Made by a program: the position numbers and the translations under genes. The notes beneath the pieces are model-generated. The model was not told the origin of the DNA. It saw nothing but the letters and a program-made list of their open reading frames with translations, and searched no databases. Positions 1,050 to 13,583 of a DNA stretch of 13,583 nucleotides are shown one piece after another. The number at the start of each line of letters is the position of its first letter. The first letter of the stretch is position 1. Location of the stretch: positions 1-13,583 of the IMG/VR virus record IMGVR_UViG_3300033892_000026. One strand, 5' to 3'.

Positions 1050-1075
1050 TAAGATGCTCGGCTCGTAGTTCCCGT

Positions 1076-1105
1076 CTAACTTGTTGTGCAGAAATTTTAA
1101 ATACC
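1076..1105 (+). promoter_or_regulatory. Conserved 30-bp promoter block, copy 1 (CTAAC box, BRE, TATA)
   Basis: CTAACTTGTTGTGCAGAAATTTTAAATACC aligns without gaps to 1397-1426 and 1773-1802. TATA lies about 25 nt before ATG 1129 (leaderless geometry). Confidence 0.85.
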
Positions 1106-1128
1106 ACTCCTTCCAATAATTAAGTACA

Positions 1129-1832: not shown

Positions 1833-2393
1833 ATGTCCTCTCCACAACCACAAGTTAAGTCAAATCCTAAGTCAGATCAAACTACTAATTCTACTCTAAC
1901 GTGGGAGGAGGTCTTACGGGCTACAAGAATAGATAAACAGCATATAGATTTTGCAATAGCACATATCGATACTGCACCAGTTATGCCGTATGAATTCATT
2001 TACAGCAAATATATCCCTTCGGATTTCAAAGTCTTCCATCCCGCTAGTGTTGCGGTTAGCGGGGCAGGAGGAGTGATAGGGTCTATTTTAGCTTTAAGAC
2101 ATGCCAGAGCAGTTAAGTACTTTGTAACAACCCAGGAAGTACTGAATTCCAACGACAAATCGCCATTGTTTCTAGCGAAGTATGCTTTAGAATTATTAGA
2201 GAAAAAATACAGAGATGTAGAAATAATTACAATAGACCTTGGTGAGTTCGAGAAAATAAAAATGCTGTTAAGTTATGGCGGGATATATATATCAGGGTTG
2301 CCTAATGAGATTATCGTTGAGATTGCCCAATTAGCGGGTTTTGGAAGATTATGGCATTTCTCGCCTATTCATCGAAAGTTCTACGTGTTCTAA
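1833..2393 (+). CDS. Hypothetical 186-aa alpha/beta protein (possible Rossmann/CARF-like fold)
   Basis: Long ORF under promoter copy 3. Disordered N-terminus followed by an alternating strand/helix pattern. The fold call is speculative. Confidence 0.8.
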   Translation: MSSPQPQVKSNPKSDQTTNSTLTWEEVLRATRIDKQHIDFAIAHIDTAPVMPYEFIYSKYIPSDFKVFHPASVAVSGAGGVIGSILALRHARAVKYFVTTQEVLNSNDKSPLFLAKYALELLEKKYRDVEIITIDLGEFEKIKMLLSYGGIYISGLPNEIIVEIAQLAGFGRLWHFSPIHRKFYVF

Positions 2394-2410
2394 ATTTCGA
2401 GGTGACAACA

Positions 2411-3163
2411 GTGAGCGAACAACAGTTTGAGAGCGAACAACAGTTTGAGCCAGAAATAAAAAAATTTAGGTGGTTGATTTCACAAGGTTATATAACTTCT
2501 ACGGAGTTAGCATTTTATTCTAACTTTTACAATATCGAGTTAACCACTATAGTCAGCTTCCAGGGACATGATGTATTAACTCCACTATTTATAGTAGCGA
2601 GACCAAGCAGATTTTATCAGATAAAGAGAGAATTAGCAGAAGCGGAAATAGCAGACCCGATTTCAAGAAAGTTCCCTGTTGTTTCCTTACTAAGTCTAGA
2701 AAAGTTTATCAATTCCCTAGTAAACATGAAAATACCCTACTTCTTCTTCTCATTATTTCTAGATAAATCTTATAATCTCCCACAAGAAGTTAACAGATTC
2801 TTATCAATTTTGATAGAGCTGGCAAACAGTTCAGGGAAGTACATCATAAAACCTTACAACATAAAAACAGAACCCCTACCGCTGAGCATAGAACCAGTGA
2901 AAGACGAGTTATATAAAGTAATTTGCCATTTCAGGAAGATGCTAGGGAATACAGTTGAGTGTAATGATGACGGGTGGTGGAAGTACAATCTTTGGGGCAA
3001 CAGAAATACTGCCAGTGTTGACAGAAAAATGATAGAGAAAATAGCACTACAATATAACATCTCGCCGATTTGCGTACAGTACGTTTTGGCATATAACAAA
3101 AACCCTTGCCACCTTTCATCGGATATCGTAAGTAAAATAAAATCCCATCTCTCTTCTTCTTAA
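2411..3163 (+). CDS. Hypothetical protein (about 250 aa)
   Basis: RBS GAGGTGA at 2399-2405 precedes an in-frame GTG at 2411, which removes the overlap implied by the 2351 start. T-run follows the stop. Confidence 0.8.
   Translation: MSEQQFESEQQFEPEIKKFRWLISQGYITSTELAFYSNFYNIELTTIVSFQGHDVLTPLFIVARPSRFYQIKRELAEAEIADPISRKFPVVSLLSLEKFINSLVNMKIPYFFFSLFLDKSYNLPQEVNRFLSILIELANSSGKYIIKPYNIKTEPLPLSIEPVKDELYKVICHFRKMLGNTVECNDDGWWKYNLWGNRNTASVDRKMIEKIALQYNISPICVQYVLAYNKNPCHLSSDIVSKIKSHLSSS
2414..2449 (+). repeat. Perfect 18-bp tandem duplication (encodes SEQQFE x2)
   Basis: AGCGAACAACAGTTTGAG at 2414-2431 and 2432-2449. Confidence 0.95.
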
Positions 3164-5680: not shown

Positions 5681-6202
5681 ATGTCCCTCTCGCATTTACA
5701 ATCGCTCGTAGGGAAAAACGTGATATTATTCAACTACCTACGTAATGTATTCAAGAATAAGATATACAAAATAGCTGAAAATGAAAACGAATATATCCTC
5801 CATGTCGATATGGGAATACCCAGCAGGTTACAGCACAGGATTACTTACCCTGGGATTTACTTTGTCACAGACGTCATGATACAAGGTACTAACTATGCGA
5901 TTTATCTGAAAAAACAGGTCGACCTAAAGAAGTTTGCATTGGTAAGCTCCATAGCAACGTCTGAGTATTACATTTCATCATACCGTAAAATACAATACAA
6001 GACTGATAAAGGGTTCGTGTTCGACTCCTTAGAATTCGATATAGGTGGGTTTCACCACCTTGTGTTTAACTACAACAAATGTATTATAGCGAAAGTGAAA
6101 AAGTCAGGTCAGAGACGCATCGCCGTATGTCTAGGTGATAGTGTAGTTATAGATGATATAAACAATGTTACATGCAATGATGAGTGGTTTAGTGTAGAGT
6201 GA
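5681..6202 (+). CDS. Hypothetical beta-rich protein (about 173 aa)
   Basis: RBS GGTGG at 5671-5675 favours ATG 5681 over GTG 5672. Confidence 0.75.
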   Translation: MSLSHLQSLVGKNVILFNYLRNVFKNKIYKIAENENEYILHVDMGIPSRLQHRITYPGIYFVTDVMIQGTNYAIYLKKQVDLKKFALVSSIATSEYYISSYRKIQYKTDKGFVFDSLEFDIGGFHHLVFNYNKCIIAKVKKSGQRRIAVCLGDSVVIDDINNVTCNDEWFSVE

Positions 6203-6213
6203 GGTGGTAGACA

Positions 6214-6870
6214 ATGGCATATACTAAAAAACAAAACGAAGTCCCTACTCCTGAACAGTTCCAATTCATTGTCTATAAAGAGGTGTGTATGGGGGACAAA
6301 AGCCTTGTACATCCTACCATAGCCATAGAGAGGTTAAACACTATAATGCTTACCTATTACAGCGACGAGATAGAGGAACTGTGGAGGGAATTAGTTCTCA
6401 AAAGATATGAGAACGCCACGTCTGAGGACGAACTAAGGCAGATTCTGCAAATTGGCTGTGACCTCATGTTTATCGTAATGAACGCGTCTGGCGAAGATGT
6501 CAAGTCGTTAGTAACGAAAATACTGAACAACACAAGGAAAAAACATCTGTTTTATGTCAACGAGGAAGGACTAGTTGCTGAAAGTTCGTATCTCATAGAC
6601 GTGCTGACAAGGTTTGTGAACCCCAACGGGTTCGATGTGTTGACTGTTTTAAGCATACTAAAGGACGTGCAAATTAGGACGGCTACTATGATTAGCAGTA
6701 TTAAGGGGACGTCACTGTATCAGTCGCTTATAAGTGAACTAGGCATTGATGAAAATACTATTGAGAAAAAATGCACGGCGAAGTACTATAGGGAATGCGT
6801 AACTGAGAAGAAAACGCAGTTGCTGAAAGCGTTACAGTTTATCAGGATGAACATAAATATTCCGCGTTAG
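6214..6870 (+). CDS. Hypothetical 218-aa all-alpha protein (weak MazG-like pattern)
   Basis: RBS GAGGTGG at 6201-6207; helical composition. Confidence 0.8.
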   Translation: MAYTKKQNEVPTPEQFQFIVYKEVCMGDKSLVHPTIAIERLNTIMLTYYSDEIEELWRELVLKRYENATSEDELRQILQIGCDLMFIVMNASGEDVKSLVTKILNNTRKKHLFYVNEEGLVAESSYLIDVLTRFVNPNGFDVLTVLSILKDVQIRTATMISSIKGTSLYQSLISELGIDENTIEKKCTAKYYRECVTEKKTQLLKALQFIRMNINIPR

Positions 6871-6909
6871 AACTAACCTAAAAAAGAATTTATAAAAAAT
6901 GGGGGTTAA

Positions 6910-6952
6910 GGGGACGGAAAGCCTCGCCCTTCCAAGGCGGGGAGGAGGTCAG
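6910..6952 (+). mobile_element. 43-bp IS200/IS605-family remnant (single hairpin; probable left-end/right-end fusion scar)
   Basis: GC-rich island in AT-rich DNA: GGGGACGGAAAG-CCTCGCC-CTTCCAA-GGCGGGG-AGGAGGTCAG. It follows TTAA (6906-6909) and ends in TCAG, resembling the subterminal hairpins of Sulfolobales IS605-type elements (recalled). Clean removal restores a TAA stop and adjacent terminator for the neighbouring gene. Confidence 0.75.
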
Positions 6953-7236
6953 TATGTATTTACATTTACATTTAGTTTTTTGAGCAGTTCATCCATGAGG
7001 CGTTTATCCTTTTTTAAAATGTCTGCGATATCATCAATATAGTCCTCGACAATCTCTTCTAGGATATCGTCAATGTGTTCTCTGACAATCTCTTCTAAAT
7101 CGTTACGGTCGAACTCGACATCATCAACATCAACATCAACATAACCTTTGTAGTCGTCGCATATGATTCCTTCGTATGTATCATTATAACAAATGTCCTC
7201 TAAGTCTTTGTATCTTATAAACACCGGGACTTTCAC
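6949..7236 (-). CDS. Highly acidic 95-aa protein (29 D/E) with an internal 12-aa duplication
   Basis: GTG start with a GGGGCG RBS-like element; minus-strand TATA TTTATATA (7282-7275); T-run terminator on the minus strand at 6899-6894. Confidence 0.85.
   Translation of the reverse strand: MKVPVFIRYKDLEDICYNDTYEGIICDDYKGYVDVDVDDVEFDRNDLEEIVREHIDDILEEIVEDYIDDIADILKKDKRLMDELLKKLNVNVNTY
7027..7098. repeat. Imperfect 36-bp tandem duplication (LEEIVREHIDDI / LEEIVEDYIDDI)
   Basis: GATATCATCAATATAGTCCTCGACAATCTCTTCTAG versus GATATCGTCAATGTGTTCTCTGACAATCTCTTCTAA. Confidence 0.85.
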
Positions 7237-7273
7237 TTAAGTCGCCCCAACATTAATAGTATTAATAAAACCA

Positions 7274-7301
7274 GTATATAAACCTCAAACAGCTGTTTTT
7301 T
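7274..7301 (-). promoter_or_regulatory. Promoter of the acidic ORF with a palindrome over the BRE region
   Basis: TATA at 7282-7275; CTCAAACA-GC-TGTTT at 7284-7298 directly upstream of it. Confidence 0.75.
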
Positions 7302-7325
7302 AAAGCGGAATACGGATTTCACTCC

Positions 7326-7991
7326 TTAACTTCCATTTAAAACTACGGTAAATATCGTGGTGTTTTGTGCATATATAACTAGAGTATTATCGCATATGTA
7401 CGATTTTACTTCTCCGCCATTATGAATCACTGTTATGCTTCCGTTTATCGGGTAGTATAATGTCTGTTCTATCAGTGCTGTCCCGTTTACCGTGATTTTT
7501 CCTTTTTGCACTGTTATATGCCCGTTATACAGTATCTGCCAACCGTATTCCGATATCCCATACGACGAGTTGTATATTACAGTAAAATTAGGATTTATCA
7601 CGGGGTATACCGTACCTGCAGGGGCGAACCCGCTTATAGCTAATACGGCAGTTTGAGTGCCGTAAAGGTAGAACGTAATTATATAGGCAGATTGTTGTGA
7701 AATAGCAATAGTAGGGTCTGGTGCTGTAACGTTTACTATGGCACGGTCGTGAGGTTTTAGGATTATGACGGTCGGGTACCAACGGTGACTGTTAATTACC
7801 GGCACCAATACATATGTTTTATTGGTAGGGTTTTGTATGCATACCGTTAACACGTTGTACTTATTTATTTCCCCTACATCGTAAAAACCCACTACCTTTG
7901 CGTGCAAAAGCGGGTGATAGAAAAAGATAGAGAACGTGAAGAGGGATGGTATTATGACTCCTAACGTTAGTACGGTTTCAAGCTTTTGCAT
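7326..7991 (-). CDS. Membrane-anchored extracellular beta-rich glycoprotein
   Basis: N-terminal hydrophobic anchor; 8 N-X-S/T sequons (NKT, NVT, NFT, NSS, NGT, NGS, NTT, NGS); GGTGG RBS; overlaps the upstream gene by 14 nt. Confidence 0.82.
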   Translation of the reverse strand: MQKLETVLTLGVIIPSLFTFSIFFYHPLLHAKVVGFYDVGEINKYNVLTVCIQNPTNKTYVLVPVINSHRWYPTVIILKPHDRAIVNVTAPDPTIAISQQSAYIITFYLYGTQTAVLAISGFAPAGTVYPVINPNFTVIYNSSYGISEYGWQILYNGHITVQKGKITVNGTALIEQTLYYPINGSITVIHNGGEVKSYICDNTLVIYAQNTTIFTVVLNGS

Positions 7992-9033
7992 CTTCTACCA
8001 CCATCCACTTGACGTATTGCAACGCAAAATAAAACGTAAAATACGCTAAATCTCTATAAGAGAATATCCATATTAACGCCGGAAGACCCCAAGCTAATTC
8101 TTTCTTATTATTATATAATAGGATTAATGTGAAAAGAGACACTTCAAGTACGGTATACACGAACGAGGGGATAGGCAAGCCGAAGGCTGTAAGGAGCGAA
8201 AACGAAACGCCCTGCTGTGCAACAGGTTGTGTAATAGTTATAACGGACGCAAGGTACTGCTTTGAAATGAAGGGTATTGATGAAAGCAGTAGTGGTAACG
8301 CGAATTCTGCTATCTTCCTAAGTTTCTGTCTTTCAAATTTAATTAGAAGAATAGCTATCAGTATCGCAAACTGCTTTACGTCTGCAGAGATTCCCAGTAA
8401 CAAGTATCTGAACCTCTCGTTTAGTAGGGCAAGAAACGCCAGGGAGTAAGCGACGAGGTTCAACTCCTGTCCTGTCGCAAAATCATACGAAAGTGCGGGA
8501 AATAGGAAAAAAGACCCAATGAAAACGTTTTCGCGTCTTTTGATGAAGGAATATGTAAAAGCTAAAACAGCTGATATTACGTCTACTGTTTCGAGGTTGT
8601 GAAAAACTGCGACACTGATAAATGATAACGGTGGGTAAATATAGACTGACGGCATAAATGAGCTTGACGTAGTGCCAGTCACAACGTTGTACGGGACGTG
8701 GTATATGGAAAACGCTTTAGCCATGGAGTAAAGGTACGGGTTTTTTCCTTCTAGGAATAGCTGTGACGCGTATAATATTATTGCTTCTTCATCCGTCAGG
8801 ATAGGTAACCCCGTCACTATATTCGCTACAGCTGTAACGGTTGCGATAACAAAAGCAGAAACAACGAGTATCCTTTGCCTCACGAATATAGAGAGCATAC
8901 CTAAGGCGACGACGAGGAACGCGGGAGGTAGTAAATACGGTTTTCCGTCACCTAAGAACGCTGTCCCTATACTGGTTAGACCTAGTCCTGCAAAAAACCA
9001 CGATAAATTTTCTTTCAGTTCCATAACAGGCAC
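7978..9033 (-). CDS. Polytopic membrane protein, probable GT-C fold glycosyltransferase (GT87/DUF2029-like)
   Basis: Many transmembrane segments. The first large loop carries TDEE...LFLEGKNPY...YIYPP, and a later KQ motif is present, as typical of GT87-like enzymes. Confidence 0.72.
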   Translation of the reverse strand: MPVMELKENLSWFFAGLGLTSIGTAFLGDGKPYLLPPAFLVVALGMLSIFVRQRILVVSAFVIATVTAVANIVTGLPILTDEEAIILYASQLFLEGKNPYLYSMAKAFSIYHVPYNVVTGTTSSSFMPSVYIYPPLSFISVAVFHNLETVDVISAVLAFTYSFIKRRENVFIGSFFLFPALSYDFATGQELNLVAYSLAFLALLNERFRYLLLGISADVKQFAILIAILLIKFERQKLRKIAEFALPLLLSSIPFISKQYLASVITITQPVAQQGVSFSLLTAFGLPIPSFVYTVLEVSLFTLILLYNNKKELAWGLPALIWIFSYRDLAYFTFYFALQYVKWMVVEDAKA

Positions 9034-9036
9034 CAG

Positions 9037-9696
9037 CTACAGCCTGTCTGTACTTATTGGAGTAATACCCAACGTTTGTGCTATTTCTAGTGGTGACAAC
9101 ATCTCTACTCTCATTTTCGACGTAGTTACTCCTCCGACTTCCATTATACTCCTTTCGAACGCTAACAACAGTAAGACTACTAGCTTGTGTGCCTGGTTAA
9201 GCTTAGCCATTATTTCATCGTAGTTCGCGTCGCTCGCTATCAAACTCTGAAGCTCCGAAAACTTTTCGGTCAATTCATCGGTTGCAAGGCTTGTAAATCT
9301 GTCGGTTAAAATCGATAATAAGATTTGGAAGGTCTCATCTACGTTATATGGGGTACCGTAAAACTGTAGAGATCCACTCTTGAGGTCTTTTGTTAGAATT
9401 AGGACGTAATTGTTTAGGATTTCCTGGATAGTCGTTATTTGGACTGCTTCCTTCTGTGTTACTTGCCTAGTCGGTATGATAGCTTTTTCCCTAATTGCTT
9501 GTCTGACTAAGTTTGGGTCTACTTTTACAATGTTCCTCTTCCCTAATGGCGATAACTGAGGTTGCTGTTGGGTTTGTTGTAATTGTGTGAATAGTGGCGT
9601 TGGTGGTGGAGGGGACGCAGTGCCTCCTACTTCATAGACGGGTTCCTGTTGCTGTTGTTGTTGCTGTTTTTTATTATTTGGATTATTTAGACTCAT
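9037..9696 (-). CDS. Hypothetical 219-aa protein with a poly-Q/poly-P N-terminus and helical C-terminal domain
   Basis: Minus-strand TATA (TTTAAAAA, 9726-9719) about 22 nt upstream; first gene of a 3-gene operon. Confidence 0.85.
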   Translation of the reverse strand: MSLNNPNNKKQQQQQQQEPVYEVGGTASPPPPTPLFTQLQQTQQQPQLSPLGKRNIVKVDPNLVRQAIREKAIIPTRQVTQKEAVQITTIQEILNNYVLILTKDLKSGSLQFYGTPYNVDETFQILLSILTDRFTSLATDELTEKFSELQSLIASDANYDEIMAKLNQAHKLVVLLLLAFERSIMEVGGVTTSKMRVEMLSPLEIAQTLGITPISTDRL

Positions 9697-9718
9697 GTTA
9701 TTTTCTTGTCCCAGAAGG

Positions 9719-9769
9719 TTTTTAAAGCGATTCCAAGACTCAAACAGATGTTTGAGGAAAATTTATAAG
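9719..9769. promoter_or_regulatory. Divergent promoter with perfect palindrome CTCAAACA-GA-TGTTTGAG (9739-9756)
   Basis: Minus-strand TATA at 9719-9726; plus-strand BRE GAAAA at 9757-9761 and TATA TTTATAAG at 9762-9769; perfect 8-bp arms between them. Confidence 0.85.
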
Positions 9770-9790
9770 TTTCTGACGCCAGATGTTCTT

Positions 9791-11542
9791 ATGCAATTGC
9801 AAGAACAACAAGGACAAAACACCGAAAATCTGTCTCCTTCTACCGACGTCTCCACTATTGCACAACGCTTGAAAGACGAGTTAGATAAATACGTTGTCGG
9901 AAATGAAGACGTCAAAACAGCTGTTATAACAGGGCTATTGACTGGGTTTCCTACTTTGCTCATCGGAGACCCAGGTACTGCGAAAACGTATACTATTGAG
10001 ATTTTATCGAAGATGATTGACGGCATTAAACCAGAAGAGCTTTTCATAGTGTTAGCTCATGAGGCAATGACACCAGAGGACATTTTTGGAAATGTAAACC
10101 TGAAAAAACTGAGAGAAGAAGGAGTACTGGAATATATTACCGAAGGCTTCCTACCTTCTGCTAAGTTAGTTTTCATAGACGAGATATTCAAGAGCAACAA
10201 AGTCCTTGCCGAATCGCTGTTCAGAGCGATCAACGAAAAGAAGTTCAAGAACGGGAGTAAAGAGGTCTCTTTACCTTGGTTGGCGTTCTTTTCCGCGTCA
10301 AACGAAGTGAGGGTAAACACACAAGCGGACAGAGCATTTCTAGACAGGTTCAAGATATTCGCTACAGTTCTTTCGCCTAACCTTGAAGATATACAAGACC
10401 TCAAGTCGATCGCAGAAAGGTATTATAAAGTCCTCACAGCGACTAAGCCTACTTCCATCCCGATTGTAACGAGTTACGACGAAGTCAAAAAAATACAGGA
10501 CAAAATCCTTTCAGATTACACTAAATATGTGACAGAGGATATTACACTCGAAGCGATAAAGCAGGCTAACCTTATCTTGGGTGAGATAGGACGTGCTTTG
10601 CAAAACCCGAGGACGTTTGGAGATTCCGGAATTGTAAGGATGTACTTCAAATCCATGGGTGGATATCTGACGATCAGCGAGAGAAAGTTCAAAAGCATAA
10701 TGCAAGTGGCTAACGCACTACGTGAAATGTTCGGCAACTCAACAATTACACCAGTGCATACCGCGTTAGCGTTCTACCTTACAATCCCGTTCACTCCAGA
10801 GTTAAAGAACATAATTACTCCTATAATCTCGACAATGATCAAAACATATTTCGGTGCTGAAGAAGGATCGAACAGGACTTCTATTGATATTAAGGGCTTG
10901 TTAGACAACTTTTTTGAAATTACAAATGATATTTTTGTAGACAAAAATCTGAATAAGATAATAGACGAAACGACCGCTTATGCTGTAAATGTTATTACTA
11001 ACTCATTCCCTGGATCGTCATCCGATTTAGCAAAAGACAAAGCAGACCTTATTTCGAAATTTTCCGATGTAACAACTAGTAAAGACACAGTGGATAAATT
11101 GAATAAATTCATAAAAGCTGTAGGTGCCTTAAGCGATATTGAAACTAAGTACGCTAATAATATTAGAGTAAGGACTTTAGCACGTAAACTCCTTCAAAGT
11201 ATTATGTCTAGTGTCTCTACCAAGATAGATGTAAATCGTTTAAAGACCGATGCATTAGATCAGCTTCAGAAGGCTTATGCCAGGATAAAAGCAGAAATTG
11301 AAAGCAAATTTAACGAACTAACGAAACAAGGAGGTAATGATGAGAACAAAAAACTTATCGAAGGGATACGAAAATTCTTCCCGCAATTTTCTAACGTATT
11401 ACCACAAGAAGCAGTGTTACAAGACCAAAAACAGCAGATAATGGTGAACCTTGCCATTGCTTTTAATGAGGCGGAGAAAAAAATAGTAGATTTCATGGAC
11501 ACATTAGAAAAGACTATAAAGATGCTTTCCCAGATGAAGTGA
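9791..11542 (+). CDS. MoxR/RavA-type AAA+ ATPase (ATV p618-like), about 583 aa
   Basis: Walker A GDPGTAKT, Walker B VFIDEIFK, sensor I ASNE, arginine finger AFLDRF, and ISERK; long helical C-terminus. Start moved to ATG 9791 on promoter geometry. Confidence 0.93.
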   Translation: MQLQEQQGQNTENLSPSTDVSTIAQRLKDELDKYVVGNEDVKTAVITGLLTGFPTLLIGDPGTAKTYTIEILSKMIDGIKPEELFIVLAHEAMTPEDIFGNVNLKKLREEGVLEYITEGFLPSAKLVFIDEIFKSNKVLAESLFRAINEKKFKNGSKEVSLPWLAFFSASNEVRVNTQADRAFLDRFKIFATVLSPNLEDIQDLKSIAERYYKVLTATKPTSIPIVTSYDEVKKIQDKILSDYTKYVTEDITLEAIKQANLILGEIGRALQNPRTFGDSGIVRMYFKSMGGYLTISERKFKSIMQVANALREMFGNSTITPVHTALAFYLTIPFTPELKNIITPIISTMIKTYFGAEEGSNRTSIDIKGLLDNFFEITNDIFVDKNLNKIIDETTAYAVNVITNSFPGSSSDLAKDKADLISKFSDVTTSKDTVDKLNKFIKAVGALSDIETKYANNIRVRTLARKLLQSIMSSVSTKIDVNRLKTDALDQLQKAYARIKAEIESKFNELTKQGGNDENKKLIEGIRKFFPQFSNVLPQEAVLQDQKQQIMVNLAIAFNEAEKKIVDFMDTLEKTIKMLSQMK

Positions 11543-11546
11543 GAGT

Positions 11547-13583
11547 ATGCAAAACTTCTTTAATAATAATGAAGACGACGAGGAGAAACAACTAATACAA
11601 CTAACAGACACTGTCTTTAAAACAGTATCCAAATTACTTAGGATTGGAGCTGACATTAGTGACAGTGTATGGAATACTGTACATAAACTTGTTAAGATAG
11701 CATCAGAACAAAATAAACTTCTATTACAATTCCCAGCAATCCTCGCTTATTTCGTTTATAATTTTCTAAAAAACATCGACCTAGATAGAATTGACGACAT
11801 AAACGAAAAACTGGACGATATCCAACGTCTGATAAAGCGTAAGAACCTTCAGGGTTTATCATTCAACACCATCAAACAGATGTTACAACAGGAGTTGCAG
11901 GAGAGAAAATTCAGACGTAACAGACCTAACAAAACAGAAAAACAACAAGAAGGACAGAAGCAAGGCGAAAAAGAAGGAGAAAAACAGGAAGAGGGAGAAG
12001 AAGGGCAAGAAAGTGGAGAAGAAGGACAAAACATGAATCAAGAGGGTGAAGGAGAAGGACAGGAATCAGAAGGTGAAGGAGAGGGAGAAGAAGAATTAGG
12101 AGAAGAAGGAGAGGGAGGGGAAAGTGAAAATGAAGGGAGCCAGGAACAACAGAGACAGGAATTAGAAAAAGAAAGTCAGGAGAGTAACGGGCAAGAAAAC
12201 GGTGAGGAACAAGAAGGTGAAGAAAGCAATGAAGGGGAACAACAAGGTGGAGAAGGAGAATCACAGGAAGGTGTAGAAGAAGGAGAAGCTGAGGGGAGCC
12301 AGAGCGGAGAAGAGGGAGAGGAGGCAGAATCACAGGGTGAAGAAGGACAAAGCGAGGAAGAAGGAAACGAAGGAGAACAAGGTAATGCCCAGGAAGGACA
12401 AGAATTAGGAGAGGAAGAAGGGGAACAAAGCGAAAACGAAGGACAAAATGGCGAGGAGCAGGGAGGTCAGAACAGTGGAGAAGGACAAGAGGGTAATGAG
12501 GAAGAAAGTGAAGGAAGCCCGAGCGGGGAACAGGAATCAGAAGGAGAATCGCAAGAAGGCGAACAAGGAGGTGGTGAAGAGGGTGAAGGTGGAGAGGAAG
12601 GTGGAGAGCAGGAAGGTGGTGAAGGAGAAGGAAGCGAAAGTGAAAGTACCCAAGGTCAAAATGGTGAACAAGGTGGAGAGGGTTCAGAAGGTGGAGAAGG
12701 GCAAGAAGTTGAAGATATTTTCGAAGACCTCGAAGACAACATTAACGAGGAATCAATGATCTTAGATCAGTTGGAAGAAAGCCTGCAAAAATCACTGACA
12801 GCATTATCAGTTGGGAAAGGCTCGGGAGGAGGAATACTAAACGAAGTCAATCCTAGAATTTTAGAACTGTTAGAGAATGCTAACAGGATTCTGGCTCTGG
12901 CTAACCAGGTCGATTTAGAGTACGCTAACAGAGGCGTTAAGGATCAAGGAGGTGTAATGAAGGGGATAACGACTGGAAATAATATTAAACACATGTTTAA
13001 GAGTCAACTGCTCCTACCAGATGAGATTTTCCTAGAACGCTACACGAACAGAGCTTTACTACAAAGGGCAGTGGAAAACGAGGGAGTCGGAGACTTCTAT
13101 TTCCTTATAGACAAAAGCGGATCGATGAGAAGTACAATGCCGAACGGGTATACGGCATTTGAAAACGTTTCTGCCGTAGCCTTAGCTTCTGCTATGGAAG
13201 CTGAAAAGAATAATAAGAAGGTATTTGTACAGTACTTCGATACTTCATCAACTGAGCCTTTGGACGTTAACAACGTTTTCGAGATAGCTCAGACCGAACC
13301 TGGAGGAGGAACTGACATGATGGACGCACTAAAACACTTCATGGATTATTATAATAACTATCCAGGGTTAAAGGACGTTAGACAGATCTTCATAATGTCT
13401 GACTTTGAGACGAATTATGATAGATTTACTCTTGAGGAGTTTAAGAACTTTGCAAGAAATAATAACCTAGTAGTGACATGTCTGCATGTATATGGTGATG
13501 ATAAAGTGCCTGATGAAATGCAATACATAATAGACGAAATCTGTGACGAATATTACAAATTTAATAACTATGACGCCAGCGAA
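11547..13583 (+). CDS. VWA (MIDAS) domain protein with a long acidic linker, MoxR partner (ATV p892-like); truncated by the window end
   Basis: ATG 4 nt after the ATPase stop (MQNFFNNNEDDEEKQ...); 679 codons to the window end. The same frame gives YFLIDKSGSM (DxSxS at 13110-13124), PGGGTD and IFIMSDF. Absent from the ORF track, consistent with having no stop in the window. Confidence 0.92.
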   Translation, partial: MQNFFNNNEDDEEKQLIQLTDTVFKTVSKLLRIGADISDSVWNTVHKLVKIASEQNKLLLQFPAILAYFVYNFLKNIDLDRIDDINEKLDDIQRLIKRKNLQGLSFNTIKQMLQQELQERKFRRNRPNKTEKQQEGQKQGEKEGEKQEEGEEGQESGEEGQNMNQEGEGEGQESEGEGEGEEELGEEGEGGESENEGSQEQQRQELEKESQESNGQENGEEQEGEESNEGEQQGGEGESQEGVEEGEAEGSQSGEEGEEAESQGEEGQSEEEGNEGEQGNAQEGQELGEEEGEQSENEGQNGEEQGGQNSGEGQEGNEEESEGSPSGEQESEGESQEGEQGGGEEGEGGEEGGEQEGGEGEGSESESTQGQNGEQGGEGSEGGEGQEVEDIFEDLEDNINEESMILDQLEESLQKSLTALSVGKGSGGGILNEVNPRILELLENANRILALANQVDLEYANRGVKDQGGVMKGITTGNNIKHMFKSQLLLPDEIFLERYTNRALLQRAVENEGVGDFYFLIDKSGSMRSTMPNGYTAFENVSAVALASAMEAEKNNKKVFVQYFDTSSTEPLDVNNVFEIAQTEPGGGTDMMDALKHFMDYYNNYPGLKDVRQIFIMSDFETNYDRFTLEEFKNFARNNNLVVTCLHVYGDDKVPDEMQYIIDEICDEYYKFNNYDASE
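11935..12750 (+). repeat. Low-complexity purine-rich tract encoding an E/G/Q/S-rich linker of about 270 aa
   Basis: Reiterated GAA/GGA/GAG/CAA codons (EGEGEG, QESEGE, EELGEEEG motifs). Confidence 0.9.

What the first reader, a model, noticed from the sequence alone, without database searches (positions are those of the whole stretch)
6949..7301. Highly acidic 95-aa orphan in its own cassette: DNA-mimic or anti-CRISPR candidate
About 30% D/E, with an internal 12-aa duplication extending an acidic amphipathic helix. It is monocistronic, with the palindrome over its BRE and a cassette-like terminator, and lies at the junction of two convergent operons. Small acidic viral proteins often mimic DNA (Ocr, AcrID1, AcrIIA4).
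Basis: partly seen in the sequence, partly recalled or inferred. Interest (0 to 1): 0.6.

Follow-up and report, generated by a model that had tools for sequence, protein, structure and literature searches.

The report
Acidic accessory protein of archaeal mobile elements
The 95-residue, very acidic gene is real, but it is not an orphan: it belongs to a small uncharacterised family found in Sulfolobus tailed-spindle viruses and pRN-type plasmids, and its role as a DNA mimic or anti-CRISPR is neither shown nor excluded.

Summary
The window is a 13.6-kb fragment of an SMV-like (Bicaudaviridae) Sulfolobus virus.

**What holds up**
- The ORF at 6949-7236 (-) is real: 95 aa, 30.5% D/E, net charge -17, and dN/dS of 0.12-0.31 against ten relatives.
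- The 12-aa duplication is real. It is an old 36-nt tandem repeat, found in only 5 of 30 family members.

**What does not**
- It is not an orphan. It matches phrog_17634 (E 5e-32). Its SMV4 and SMV2 homologues map to arCOG09859.
- Relatives occur in SMV2, SMV3, SMV4, 16 viral contigs, plasmid pHEN7 and integrated elements.
- The single-gene layout is derived. Thirteen of 16 related loci carry a translationally coupled upstream partner gene behind the same conserved promoter.
- SMV1 lacks both genes, so a virion structural role is unlikely.
- The palindrome AAACAGCTGTTT is a genome-wide SMV motif (30-33 copies per genome), not specific to this gene.
- The "terminator" hairpin is not significant. 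It lies in a highly repeated, indel-polymorphic 60-70-bp element.

**Function**
- No Pfam, PADLOC, PDB or fold match was found.
- The family is absent from the published list of predicted archaeal anti-defence genes.
- In plasmid-type elements the gene sits just upstream of RHH/CopG and Rep genes.
- My best guess is an acidic decoy that binds a DNA-binding protein. This is inferred, not shown.

The parts
6949..7236 (-). Coding sequence of the 95-aa acidic protein (P0001), GTG start. Member of phrog_17634; its SMV4 and SMV2 homologues map to arCOG09859.
   Evidence: dN/dS 0.12-0.31 against ten homologues
7022..7093 (-). 36-nt tandem duplication (7058-7093 then 7022-7057 in gene sense), encoding LEEIVREHIDDI / LEEIVEDYIDDI. 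It lengthens the predicted helix 44-76 by 12 residues.
   Evidence: D7, 75% nt identity; present in 5 of 30 family members; helix
7275..7282 (-). TATA box TTTATATA of the gene's promoter, conserved in all related loci.
7283..7298 (-). GAGG (BRE position) plus the 12-bp palindrome AAACAGCTGTTT (7287-7298). This is a genome-wide SMV promoter-associated motif and a candidate operator.
7233..7253 (-). Six-codon mini-ORF (ATG TTG GGG CGA CTT AAG TGA) whose stop overlaps the GTG start. Its ATG lies about 25 nt from the TATA centre, so it may be a leaderless start with coupled re-initiation. It occupies the slot where related loci carry the partner gene. The stretch also holds an SD-like GGGGCGA (7248-7242).
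   Evidence: read; inference, not tested
7252..7266 (.). 15-nt palindrome ATTAATACTATTAAT between the TATA box and the start codon. Not seen at this place in the related loci read.
   Evidence: read
6880..6899 (-). Two T6 runs on the minus strand (6899-6894 and 6885-6880), 50-64 nt after the stop codon. Plausible archaeal termination signals.
   Evidence: read; inference
6885..6953 (.). Repeated, indel-polymorphic element of about 60-70 bp, with core CGGAAAGCCTCGCCCTTCCAAGGCGGGGAGG and a 7-bp stem that pairs better on the + strand.

Best explanation
Window 6949-7236 (-) encodes a genuine small protein of a conserved, uncharacterised family (phrog_17634; homologues map to arCOG09859).

**Where the family occurs (shown).** It is a backbone gene of pRN-type plasmids and integrative elements of Sulfolobales. 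There it lies just upstream of, and co-directional with, an RHH/CopG-like gene and the large Rep-like gene. It is usually translationally coupled to a small upstream gene. It is also an accessory cassette in SMV-type tailed-spindle viruses, always at the convergent junction after the 221-aa gene.

**This window (shown).** The upstream partner gene has been lost, so the conserved promoter drives the acidic gene alone.

**Predicted shape (pLDDT 73).** A short N-terminal beta-hairpin has two cross-strand cysteines. It is followed by one long acidic amphipathic helix carrying the family signature D-L-E-x-I-V ... Y-x-D-D-I-x-D-I-L. An old 12-residue duplication lengthens this helix by about 18 A and adds five acidic residues. 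A short basic helix ends the protein.

**Mechanism (inferred).** The protein has no catalytic features. I propose that it acts stoichiometrically by protein-protein binding, with the acidic helix serving as a decoy for the nucleic-acid-binding surface of a basic protein. The conserved synteny makes a DNA-binding regulator or replication protein of the element the most likely target. That would make it an antirepressor-like modulator. A rival element or the host could supply the target instead.
For: - Real gene under purifying selection: dN/dS 0.12-0.31, similar to the neighbouring gene.
- Family membership and distribution.
- Conserved position in 16 viral loci, 13 of them with the partner gene and 3 without, plus SMV2 without.
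- The same promoter is retained in the window.
- A strong SD (GAGGTGAGC) sits inside the partner's 3' end and the two genes abut, which implies coupled translation.
- Plasmid and integrated contexts follow the order small gene -> acidic gene -> RHH/DUF6290 -> 620-730-aa Rep-like gene. PMC11065993 Supplementary Data 5 lists CopG/RHH as the commonest neighbour of arCOG09859.
- The partner-acidic pair recurs at 42-43% identity in distant elements (hhalign 98.8-99.2%).
- Acidity is conserved in all 30 members (net -7 to -18).
- The conserved residues are specific acidic and hydrophobic positions on the helix.
- Contigs in a metatranscriptome library cover the ORF, including the two-repeat allele. 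This is weak evidence, since DNA carry-over is not excluded.
Against: - No binding partner was identified. The co-fold of the SMV3 acidic protein with its partner gave no verdict.
- The structure model is only moderately confident (pLDDT 73, pTM 0.33) and no electrostatic surface could be computed.
- No RHH/CopG or Rep gene is recognisable in this 13.6-kb window. The proposed target class may therefore be absent from the virus, which would favour a host target.
- The gene sits in a variable hot spot and is dispensable in SMV1, a pattern also typical of anti-defence genes.
- Synteny is circumstantial evidence.
Confidence: 0.35

Rival explanations
1. Anti-defence protein. This is the reader's idea: an acidic DNA mimic that blocks a host CRISPR-Cas, restriction or other DNA-targeting defence complex during establishment of the virus or plasmid.
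For: - Very acidic, and this is conserved across the family.
- Small, with no enzymatic motif.
- Shared by viruses and plasmids.
- Accessory: absent from SMV1, and located in a hot spot where SMV1 has a MITE and SMV3 an extra 219-aa gene.
- dS is 2-3 times that of the flanking gene at equal dN/dS, which indicates cassette exchange by recombination.
Against: - No similarity to any Pfam, PADLOC, PDB or BFVD entry other than its own family.
- Not in the predicted anti-defence gene lists for SMV2, SMV3 and SMV4 (PMC11065993).
- Its promoter motif is the general SMV palindrome, which also precedes the MoxR/vWA operon. It is not an early or Acr-specific motif.
- Stable synteny with RHH and Rep genes across distant plasmid-type elements is unusual for anti-defence cargo.
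- dN/dS shows no sign of an arms race.
Confidence: 0.22
2. Obligate subunit of a two-protein complex with the upstream partner (arCOG09874-like, also acidic), whose function is unrelated to nucleic-acid mimicry. In this window the partner is lost, so the gene would be a decaying or neofunctionalised remnant.
For: - The genes abut, with an SD inside the partner's 3' end, in 13 of 16 loci.
- The pair is conserved in distant elements.
- The window copy has a weaker SD-like sequence and a GTG start.
Against: - The acidic gene occurs without the partner in at least three junction types: the window, L017-L019 and SMV2.
- It pairs with unrelated upstream genes in pHEN7, L032 and L034.
- The window ORF is intact and a near-identical protein (93%) exists in other samples.
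- The co-fold gave no verdict.
Confidence: 0.1
3. Virion structural or assembly protein of the spindle virus.
For: The window also carries genes whose PHROG families are annotated as virion structural proteins (1833-3163) and the MoxR/vWA pair. One distant homologue sits beside a MoxR-vWA pair (L029).
Against: - SMV1 is a complete genome record of a named virus and lacks the gene.
- Homologues are on the cryptic plasmid pHEN7 and in integrated plasmid-like elements.
- phrog_17634 carries no structural annotation.
Confidence: 0.03

Closest known systems
phrog_17634 / arCOG09859 ('uncharacterized protein; likely a viral/plasmid protein'): SMV4 gp29 (ALG97053.1), SMV3 gp37 (ALG96974.1), SMV2 gp27 (AIZ11361.1), pHEN7 WP_011114822.1
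   Same: - Clear sequence homologues: 48-75% identity, profile E 5e-32.
- Same length class and same acidic helix motif Y-x-DD-I-x-DIL.
- Same genomic slot in SMV genomes.
   Different: - The window copy carries the 12-aa duplication, shared only with SMV3 and three metagenomic proteins.
- It has lost the upstream partner gene that SMV3 and SMV4 keep.
DNA-mimic proteins (T7 Ocr, ArdA, AcrIIA4, lambda Gam, CarS antirepressor); named from general knowledge, not from a search
   Same: Small, strongly acidic, carried by mobile elements, no catalytic motif. A long acidic helix is a plausible mimic surface.
   Different: - No sequence or fold similarity was found.
- No rigid charge-pattern analysis was possible.
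- No target is known.
Archaeal anti-CRISPRs and predicted anti-defence genes (AcrID1, AcrIIIB1, AcrIIIB2, AcrIII-1; ADG families of PMC11065993)
   Same: Small single genes of Sulfolobales viruses with a TATA box and a conserved upstream motif.
   Different: - Not listed among the predicted ADGs of SMV2, SMV3 and SMV4.
- Its upstream motif is a palindrome found throughout the genome, including before the MoxR operon.
Small regulators of pRN-type plasmids (CopG/ORF56, PlrA/ORF80)
   Same: Same neighbourhood: in pHEN7 the homologue lies between plrA and copG-repA.
   Different: - It is a separate gene from PlrA and CopG.
- It is acidic, and no DNA-binding domain was detected.
- It lies outside the minimal replicon defined for pRN1, which is orf56/orf904 plus flanks (PMC4234260 abstract).

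Membership tests
phrog_17634 / arCOG09859 | Significant profile match over the whole protein | tested here: met
   phrog_17634 E 5.4e-32, in two stretches because of the duplication. The SMV4 and SMV2 homologues map to arCOG09859 in PMC11065993 Supplementary Data 5. The window protein is 48-75% identical to them.
phrog_17634 / arCOG09859 | Conserved genomic slot in SMV genomes (after the 221-aa gene, at the convergent junction) | tested here: met
   16 of 16 related viral loci, plus SMV2, SMV3 and SMV4.
DNA-mimic proteins | High density of surface carboxylates (strong net negative charge) | tested here: met
   30.5% D/E and net -17. All 30 family members are net -7 to -18.
DNA-mimic proteins | Rigid fold whose acidic side chains reproduce the spacing of DNA phosphates | not testable with these tools
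   The model has pLDDT 73 and pTM 0.33. No coordinates or electrostatics were available.
DNA-mimic proteins | Homology or fold similarity to a known mimic | tested here: not met
   Foldseek against PDB: best E 8.5. VIA-align wide search: best Z 4.0, long-helix matches only. BFVD: only its own SMV4 homologue. PDB sequence profile: nothing below E 0.08.
DNA-mimic proteins | Binds the DNA-binding site of a target protein and competes with DNA | not testable with these tools
   Needs pull-down and competition assays.
Anti-CRISPR / anti-defence genes of archaeal viruses | Listed as, or similar to, a known Acr or predicted ADG family | tested here: not met
   The locus tags and accessions of the SMV2, SMV3 and SMV4 homologues and partners are absent from Supplementary Data 1 of PMC11065993, which does list other genes of these viruses. 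No Pfam or PADLOC hit.
Anti-CRISPR / anti-defence genes of archaeal viruses | Inhibits a defence system in vivo | not testable with these tools
   Needs interference assays.
Type II antitoxin (acidic protein neutralising an adjacent toxin) | Adjacent toxin gene | tested here: not met
   The coupled partner is itself acidic (net about -5 to -10) and has no toxin domain. The window has no partner at all.
Virion structural protein | Present in all members of the virus group that build the same virion | tested here: not met
   Absent from SMV1 and SMV1a at this locus and not found elsewhere in them by tblastn. Present on plasmid pHEN7.

The most novel reading that the evidence does not exclude
The arCOG09859/phrog_17634 proteins are a new class of archaeal nucleic-acid-mimicking decoys shared by plasmids and viruses. 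They would either disarm a host defence complex or act as antirepressors of RHH/CopG-type regulators. The 12-residue helix duplication would tune the length of the mimic, one versus two repeat units, to its target.
Probability: 0.2. Interest if true: 0.65.

Novelty: new member of a known kind. Interest (0 to 1): 0.33.

Why it matters
Very few archaeal virus proteins have a known function, and only a handful of archaeal anti-defence proteins or antirepressors are characterised.

This family is small, conserved, easy to express, and present on both model-system plasmids (pRN type) and SMV viruses that infect laboratory Sulfolobus strains. Natural alleles exist with one or two helix repeats, and with or without the partner gene. 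That makes it a tractable candidate for finding a new protein-protein inhibitory mechanism.

As it stands, the finding is another member of an already catalogued 'hypothetical' family. The by-products may be of equal interest: the genome-wide SMV palindrome and the repeated 3' hairpin element.

Tried and rejected
- **Co-fold of the SMV3 acidic protein with its partner** (alignments A7 and A6): no verdict, score 0.00. This is not evidence either way.
- **Structure.** An 11-sequence alignment gave an unusable model (pLDDT 50). A 30-sequence alignment gave pLDDT 73.
- **Fold searches** against PDB, PDB wide and BFVD found only generic long-helix matches or the family itself. The ESM Atlas gave only unnamed clusters scoring below 0.9.
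- **Family scans.** Pfam, NCBIfam and PADLOC, run on the protein (Pfam, PADLOC) or on all 30 members (Pfam, NCBIfam), gave only sub-threshold noise such as SapB_2, CdiI_2 and MtrB.
- **Longer relatives.** The only much longer hit in the unrestricted profile search (P0043, 1213 aa) is a bacterial Ig/cadherin adhesin. It is a compositional match, so no fusion relatives are known.
The deep alignment was too divergent for pattern scans.
- **PlrA/ORF80 of pRN plasmids** was considered and rejected. pHEN7 has a separate plrA gene.
- **Toxin-antitoxin pair** was considered and rejected. Both proteins are acidic and neither has a toxin domain.
- **Terminator hairpin** is not more stable than shuffled sequence on either strand.
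- **Rfam** gave only a sub-threshold HgcC hit: 20.6 bits against a gathering score of 50.
- **The AcrIIIB2 paper** (PMC10681719) proved irrelevant. That Acr comes from SIRV3, not SMV1.
- **A literature search for the palindrome** found nothing.

Full report
**1. What the window is.** The window is a complete IMG/VR viral record of 13,583 bp, estimated to be about 25% of a genome. Bases 6000-8500 are 84-86% identical at the DNA level to Sulfolobus monocaudaviruses SMV4, SMV1 and SMV3 of the Bicaudaviridae. Gene content agrees with this:
- an integrase fragment;
- an SSV1 D-63-like protein;
- two genes whose PHROG families are annotated as virion structural proteins;
- a HAD phosphatase;
- a MoxR-type AAA ATPase and a vWA protein.

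**2. The observation.**
- The ORF is at 6949..7236 on the minus strand: 95 aa with a GTG start.
- It has 19 D and 10 E (30.5%), 12 K/R and pI 4.1. Among the window's ORFs only the low-complexity vWA protein has a larger net negative charge.
- Residues 47-58 (LEEIVREHIDDI) and 59-70 (LEEIVEDYIDDI) are a tandem duplication with 9 of 12 residues identical.
- At DNA level this is a 36-nt repeat (7022-7057 / 7058-7093) that is only 75% identical (D7). The duplication is therefore old.

**3. It is a real gene and not an orphan.**
- It matches phrog_17634 at E 5.4e-32.
- tblastn finds homologues in SMV3, SMV4 and SMV2.
- The word-based search of 5.8 billion proteins gives 10 homologues at 57-93% identity.
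- A profile search of 1.84 billion representatives gives 26 clusters, nearly all 77-101 aa. This costly search was justified because the family scans left the protein open. It has no length filter, so it also covers fusions. The one long hit is a bacterial Ig/cadherin adhesin, which is a compositional match.
- Supplementary Data 5 of PMC11065993 maps the SMV4 and SMV2 homologues to arCOG09859. The authors comment 'likely a viral/plasmid protein' and give CopG/RHH as the commonest neighbour.
- dN/dS against ten viral homologues is 0.12-0.31, the same range as the neighbouring 221-aa gene.
- dS is 2-3 times higher than in that neighbour. The cassette therefore has a deeper or separate history, consistent with recombinational exchange rather than faster protein evolution.

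**4.
- Only five of 30 family members carry the 12-aa duplication: the window, a 93%-identical metagenomic protein, two other metagenomic proteins and SMV3.
- All the others have one copy, and none has three.
- Net charge is -14 to -18 with two copies, against -7 to -17 (mostly -7 to -14) with one copy.
- In a hot-spring mat metatranscriptome library, one contig covers 7023-7217 with 3 differences, which is the two-copy allele. Another contig shows a net 36-nt shorter form.
- These are assembled contigs from an RNA library, so DNA carry-over is not excluded.

**5. 'Its own cassette' is a derived state.**
- In all 16 related viral loci the gene follows the 221-aa gene at the convergent junction.
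- In 13 of them, and in SMV3 and SMV4, an 84-97-aa gene (phrog_25804; SMV3 copy maps to arCOG09874) lies between the promoter and the acidic gene.
- That partner's stop abuts the acidic gene's start, and its last codons contain a strong Shine-Dalgarno, GAGGTGAGC.
- The promoter CTCACAAACAGCTGTTTGAGGTTTATATAC is conserved in every locus and in the window.
- Three loci (L017-L019) lack the partner with a different junction from the window. There the promoter leader is fused directly to the acidic gene's start, at a GTGAGC..AAATG sequence that both start regions share.
- SMV2 also lacks the partner.
- SMV1 and SMV1a lack both genes and carry MITE-SMN2 at this place. SMV3 has an extra 219-aa gene there.
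- The junction is therefore a hot spot, and the acidic gene can stand alone.
- In the window, the space left by the partner reads as a six-codon mini-ORF (7253-7233). Its ATG lies about 25 nt from the TATA centre and its TGA overlaps the GTG start. A leaderless start with coupled re-initiation is my inference and is untested.

**6. The palindrome and the 'terminator' are generic.**
- AAACAGCTGTTT (up to 2 mismatches) occurs 13 times in the window against 1.15 expected.
- Copies lie in other promoter-like regions, including in front of the MoxR operon (AAACAGATGTTTGAGGAAAATTTATAAG at 9742).
- SMV3 and SMV4 carry 33 and 30 copies (up to 1 mismatch), against 0 for the reversed control.
- It is thus a genome-wide candidate operator and says nothing specific about this gene.
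- Downstream of the ORF, the hairpin is no more stable than shuffled sequence on either strand.
- It belongs to a 60-70-bp element (6885-6953) with several marks of a repeated element:
  - its summed contig depth in hot-spring metagenomes is over 100 times that of the flanks, with many different neighbours;
  - in some variant contigs its 69 nt are replaced by 9 nt;
  - it lies inverted beside the MITE in SMV1;
  - it recurs after the 221-aa gene in other loci.
- T6 runs on the minus strand at 6899-6894 and 6885-6880 are the likelier stop signals.

**7. Structure.**
- With 30 aligned sequences AlphaFold2 gives pLDDT 73 and pTM 0.33.
- The model has a beta-hairpin at 16-19 / 23-26. This register places C16 opposite C26, so a disulfide staple is possible (inference).
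- A long helix runs from 44 to 76 and contains the duplication. A short basic helix covers 78-87.
- In the deep alignment D68 is invariant. I7, E13, D46, Y66, D69 and I73 are nearly invariant.
- No fold, PDB, Pfam, NCBIfam or PADLOC relative was found.

**8. Context outside the viruses.**
- In plasmid pHEN7 the homologue lies between plrA and copG-repA. It is coupled to an unrelated 98-aa gene.
- In metagenomic and chromosomal elements the order is: small coupled gene, acidic gene, sometimes another small gene, an RHH/DUF6290 CopG-like gene, then a 620-730-aa Rep-like gene.
- The coupled gene is partner-like in L029 and L036 (hhalign 98.8-99.2%). It is an RHH protein in L032, L034 and L035.
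- One such element is flanked by an SSV-type integrase in a 2.57-Mb chromosome.
- The acidic gene is the constant element and its upstream neighbour varies.

**9. Interpretation.**
- *Shown:* the gene is real, conserved and acidic. It belongs to a family specific to mobile elements, is accessory in SMVs, and is syntenic with RHH and Rep genes in plasmid-type elements.
- *Inferred:* it acts by binding another protein through its acidic amphipathic helix, most plausibly as a decoy for a basic DNA-binding protein.
- The synteny favours a regulator or replication protein of the element as the target (confidence about 0.35).
- The accessory, hot-spot behaviour keeps an anti-defence role open (about 0.22).
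- A virion role is unlikely, because SMV1 lacks the gene and plasmids carry it.
- The published motif-based anti-defence gene list for SMV2, SMV3 and SMV4 does not include this gene or its partner.
- The co-fold with the partner gave no verdict.

**10. Verdict.** 'Orphan' is refuted. The private-cassette features are generic or derived. The DNA-mimic/anti-CRISPR reading remains an untested candidate with no specific support. This is a new member, and a duplication-bearing, partner-less variant, of an already catalogued uncharacterised family.

Noticed in passing
window 1038, 1348, 4321, 7287, 9742 and eight further sites; SMV3 and SMV4 genomes (G001, G002): The 12-bp palindrome AAACAGCTGTTT is a genome-wide motif of SMV-type viruses. 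It has 13 copies in the window against 1.15 expected, and 33 and 30 copies in SMV3 and SMV4 against 0 for the reversed control. It often lies just upstream of TATA boxes, including the MoxR/vWA operon. This makes it a candidate operator for an unidentified dimeric regulator. No paper in the held library mentions it.
   Followed up: partly
window 6885-6953: An element of about 60-70 bp (core CGGAAAGCCTCGCCCTTCCAAGGCGGGGAGG) has more than 100-fold excess summed contig depth in hot-spring DNA and RNA libraries, with many different flanks. In variant contigs its 69 nt are replaced by 9 nt. It lies inverted next to MITE-SMN2 in SMV1, and related copies follow the 221-aa gene in other loci. It looks like a small mobile or repeated hairpin element at gene 3' ends. 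Rfam gives only a sub-threshold HgcC hit.
   Followed up: partly
window 6871-6981: The convergent transcripts probably overlap. The first T-run after the + strand 218-aa gene is at 6976-6981, inside the acidic ORF. The minus-strand T-runs are at 6899-6880. The 3' ends could therefore be antisense to each other over about 100 nt.
   Followed up: no
window 7233-7253: A six-codon mini-ORF (MLGRLK) has a stop that overlaps the GTG start of the acidic gene. It lies in the slot where related loci carry the partner gene, at the distance from the TATA box expected for a leaderless start.
   Followed up: no
window 9695-9800: The 615-aa MoxR ORF is probably over-extended at its 5' end. A palindrome plus a TATA-like box (9742-9770) lies inside its first codons, an ATG follows near 9795, and SMV1 annotates a gap of about 90 nt here.
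   Followed up: no
window 11940-12720: The vWA protein carries an E/G/Q-rich acidic low-complexity insert spanning roughly 260-280 residues (26 imperfect repeat copies; net charge of the protein -115).
   Followed up: no
window 1066-1109, 1387-1430, 1763-1806: Three copies of a 44-nt promoter-like module containing TTTAAATA (TTAAATA in the third copy) precede successive ORFs. These include the SSV1 D-63-like gene and a gene whose PHROG family is annotated as virion structural.
   Followed up: no
L029:100-3960: In a 4.4-kb MAG contig the partner-acidic pair lies directly downstream of a cellular-type MoxR (bpMoxR) and vWA gene pair and upstream of an RHH gene. This is a second, independent co-occurrence of this pair with MoxR/vWA genes.
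   Followed up: partly
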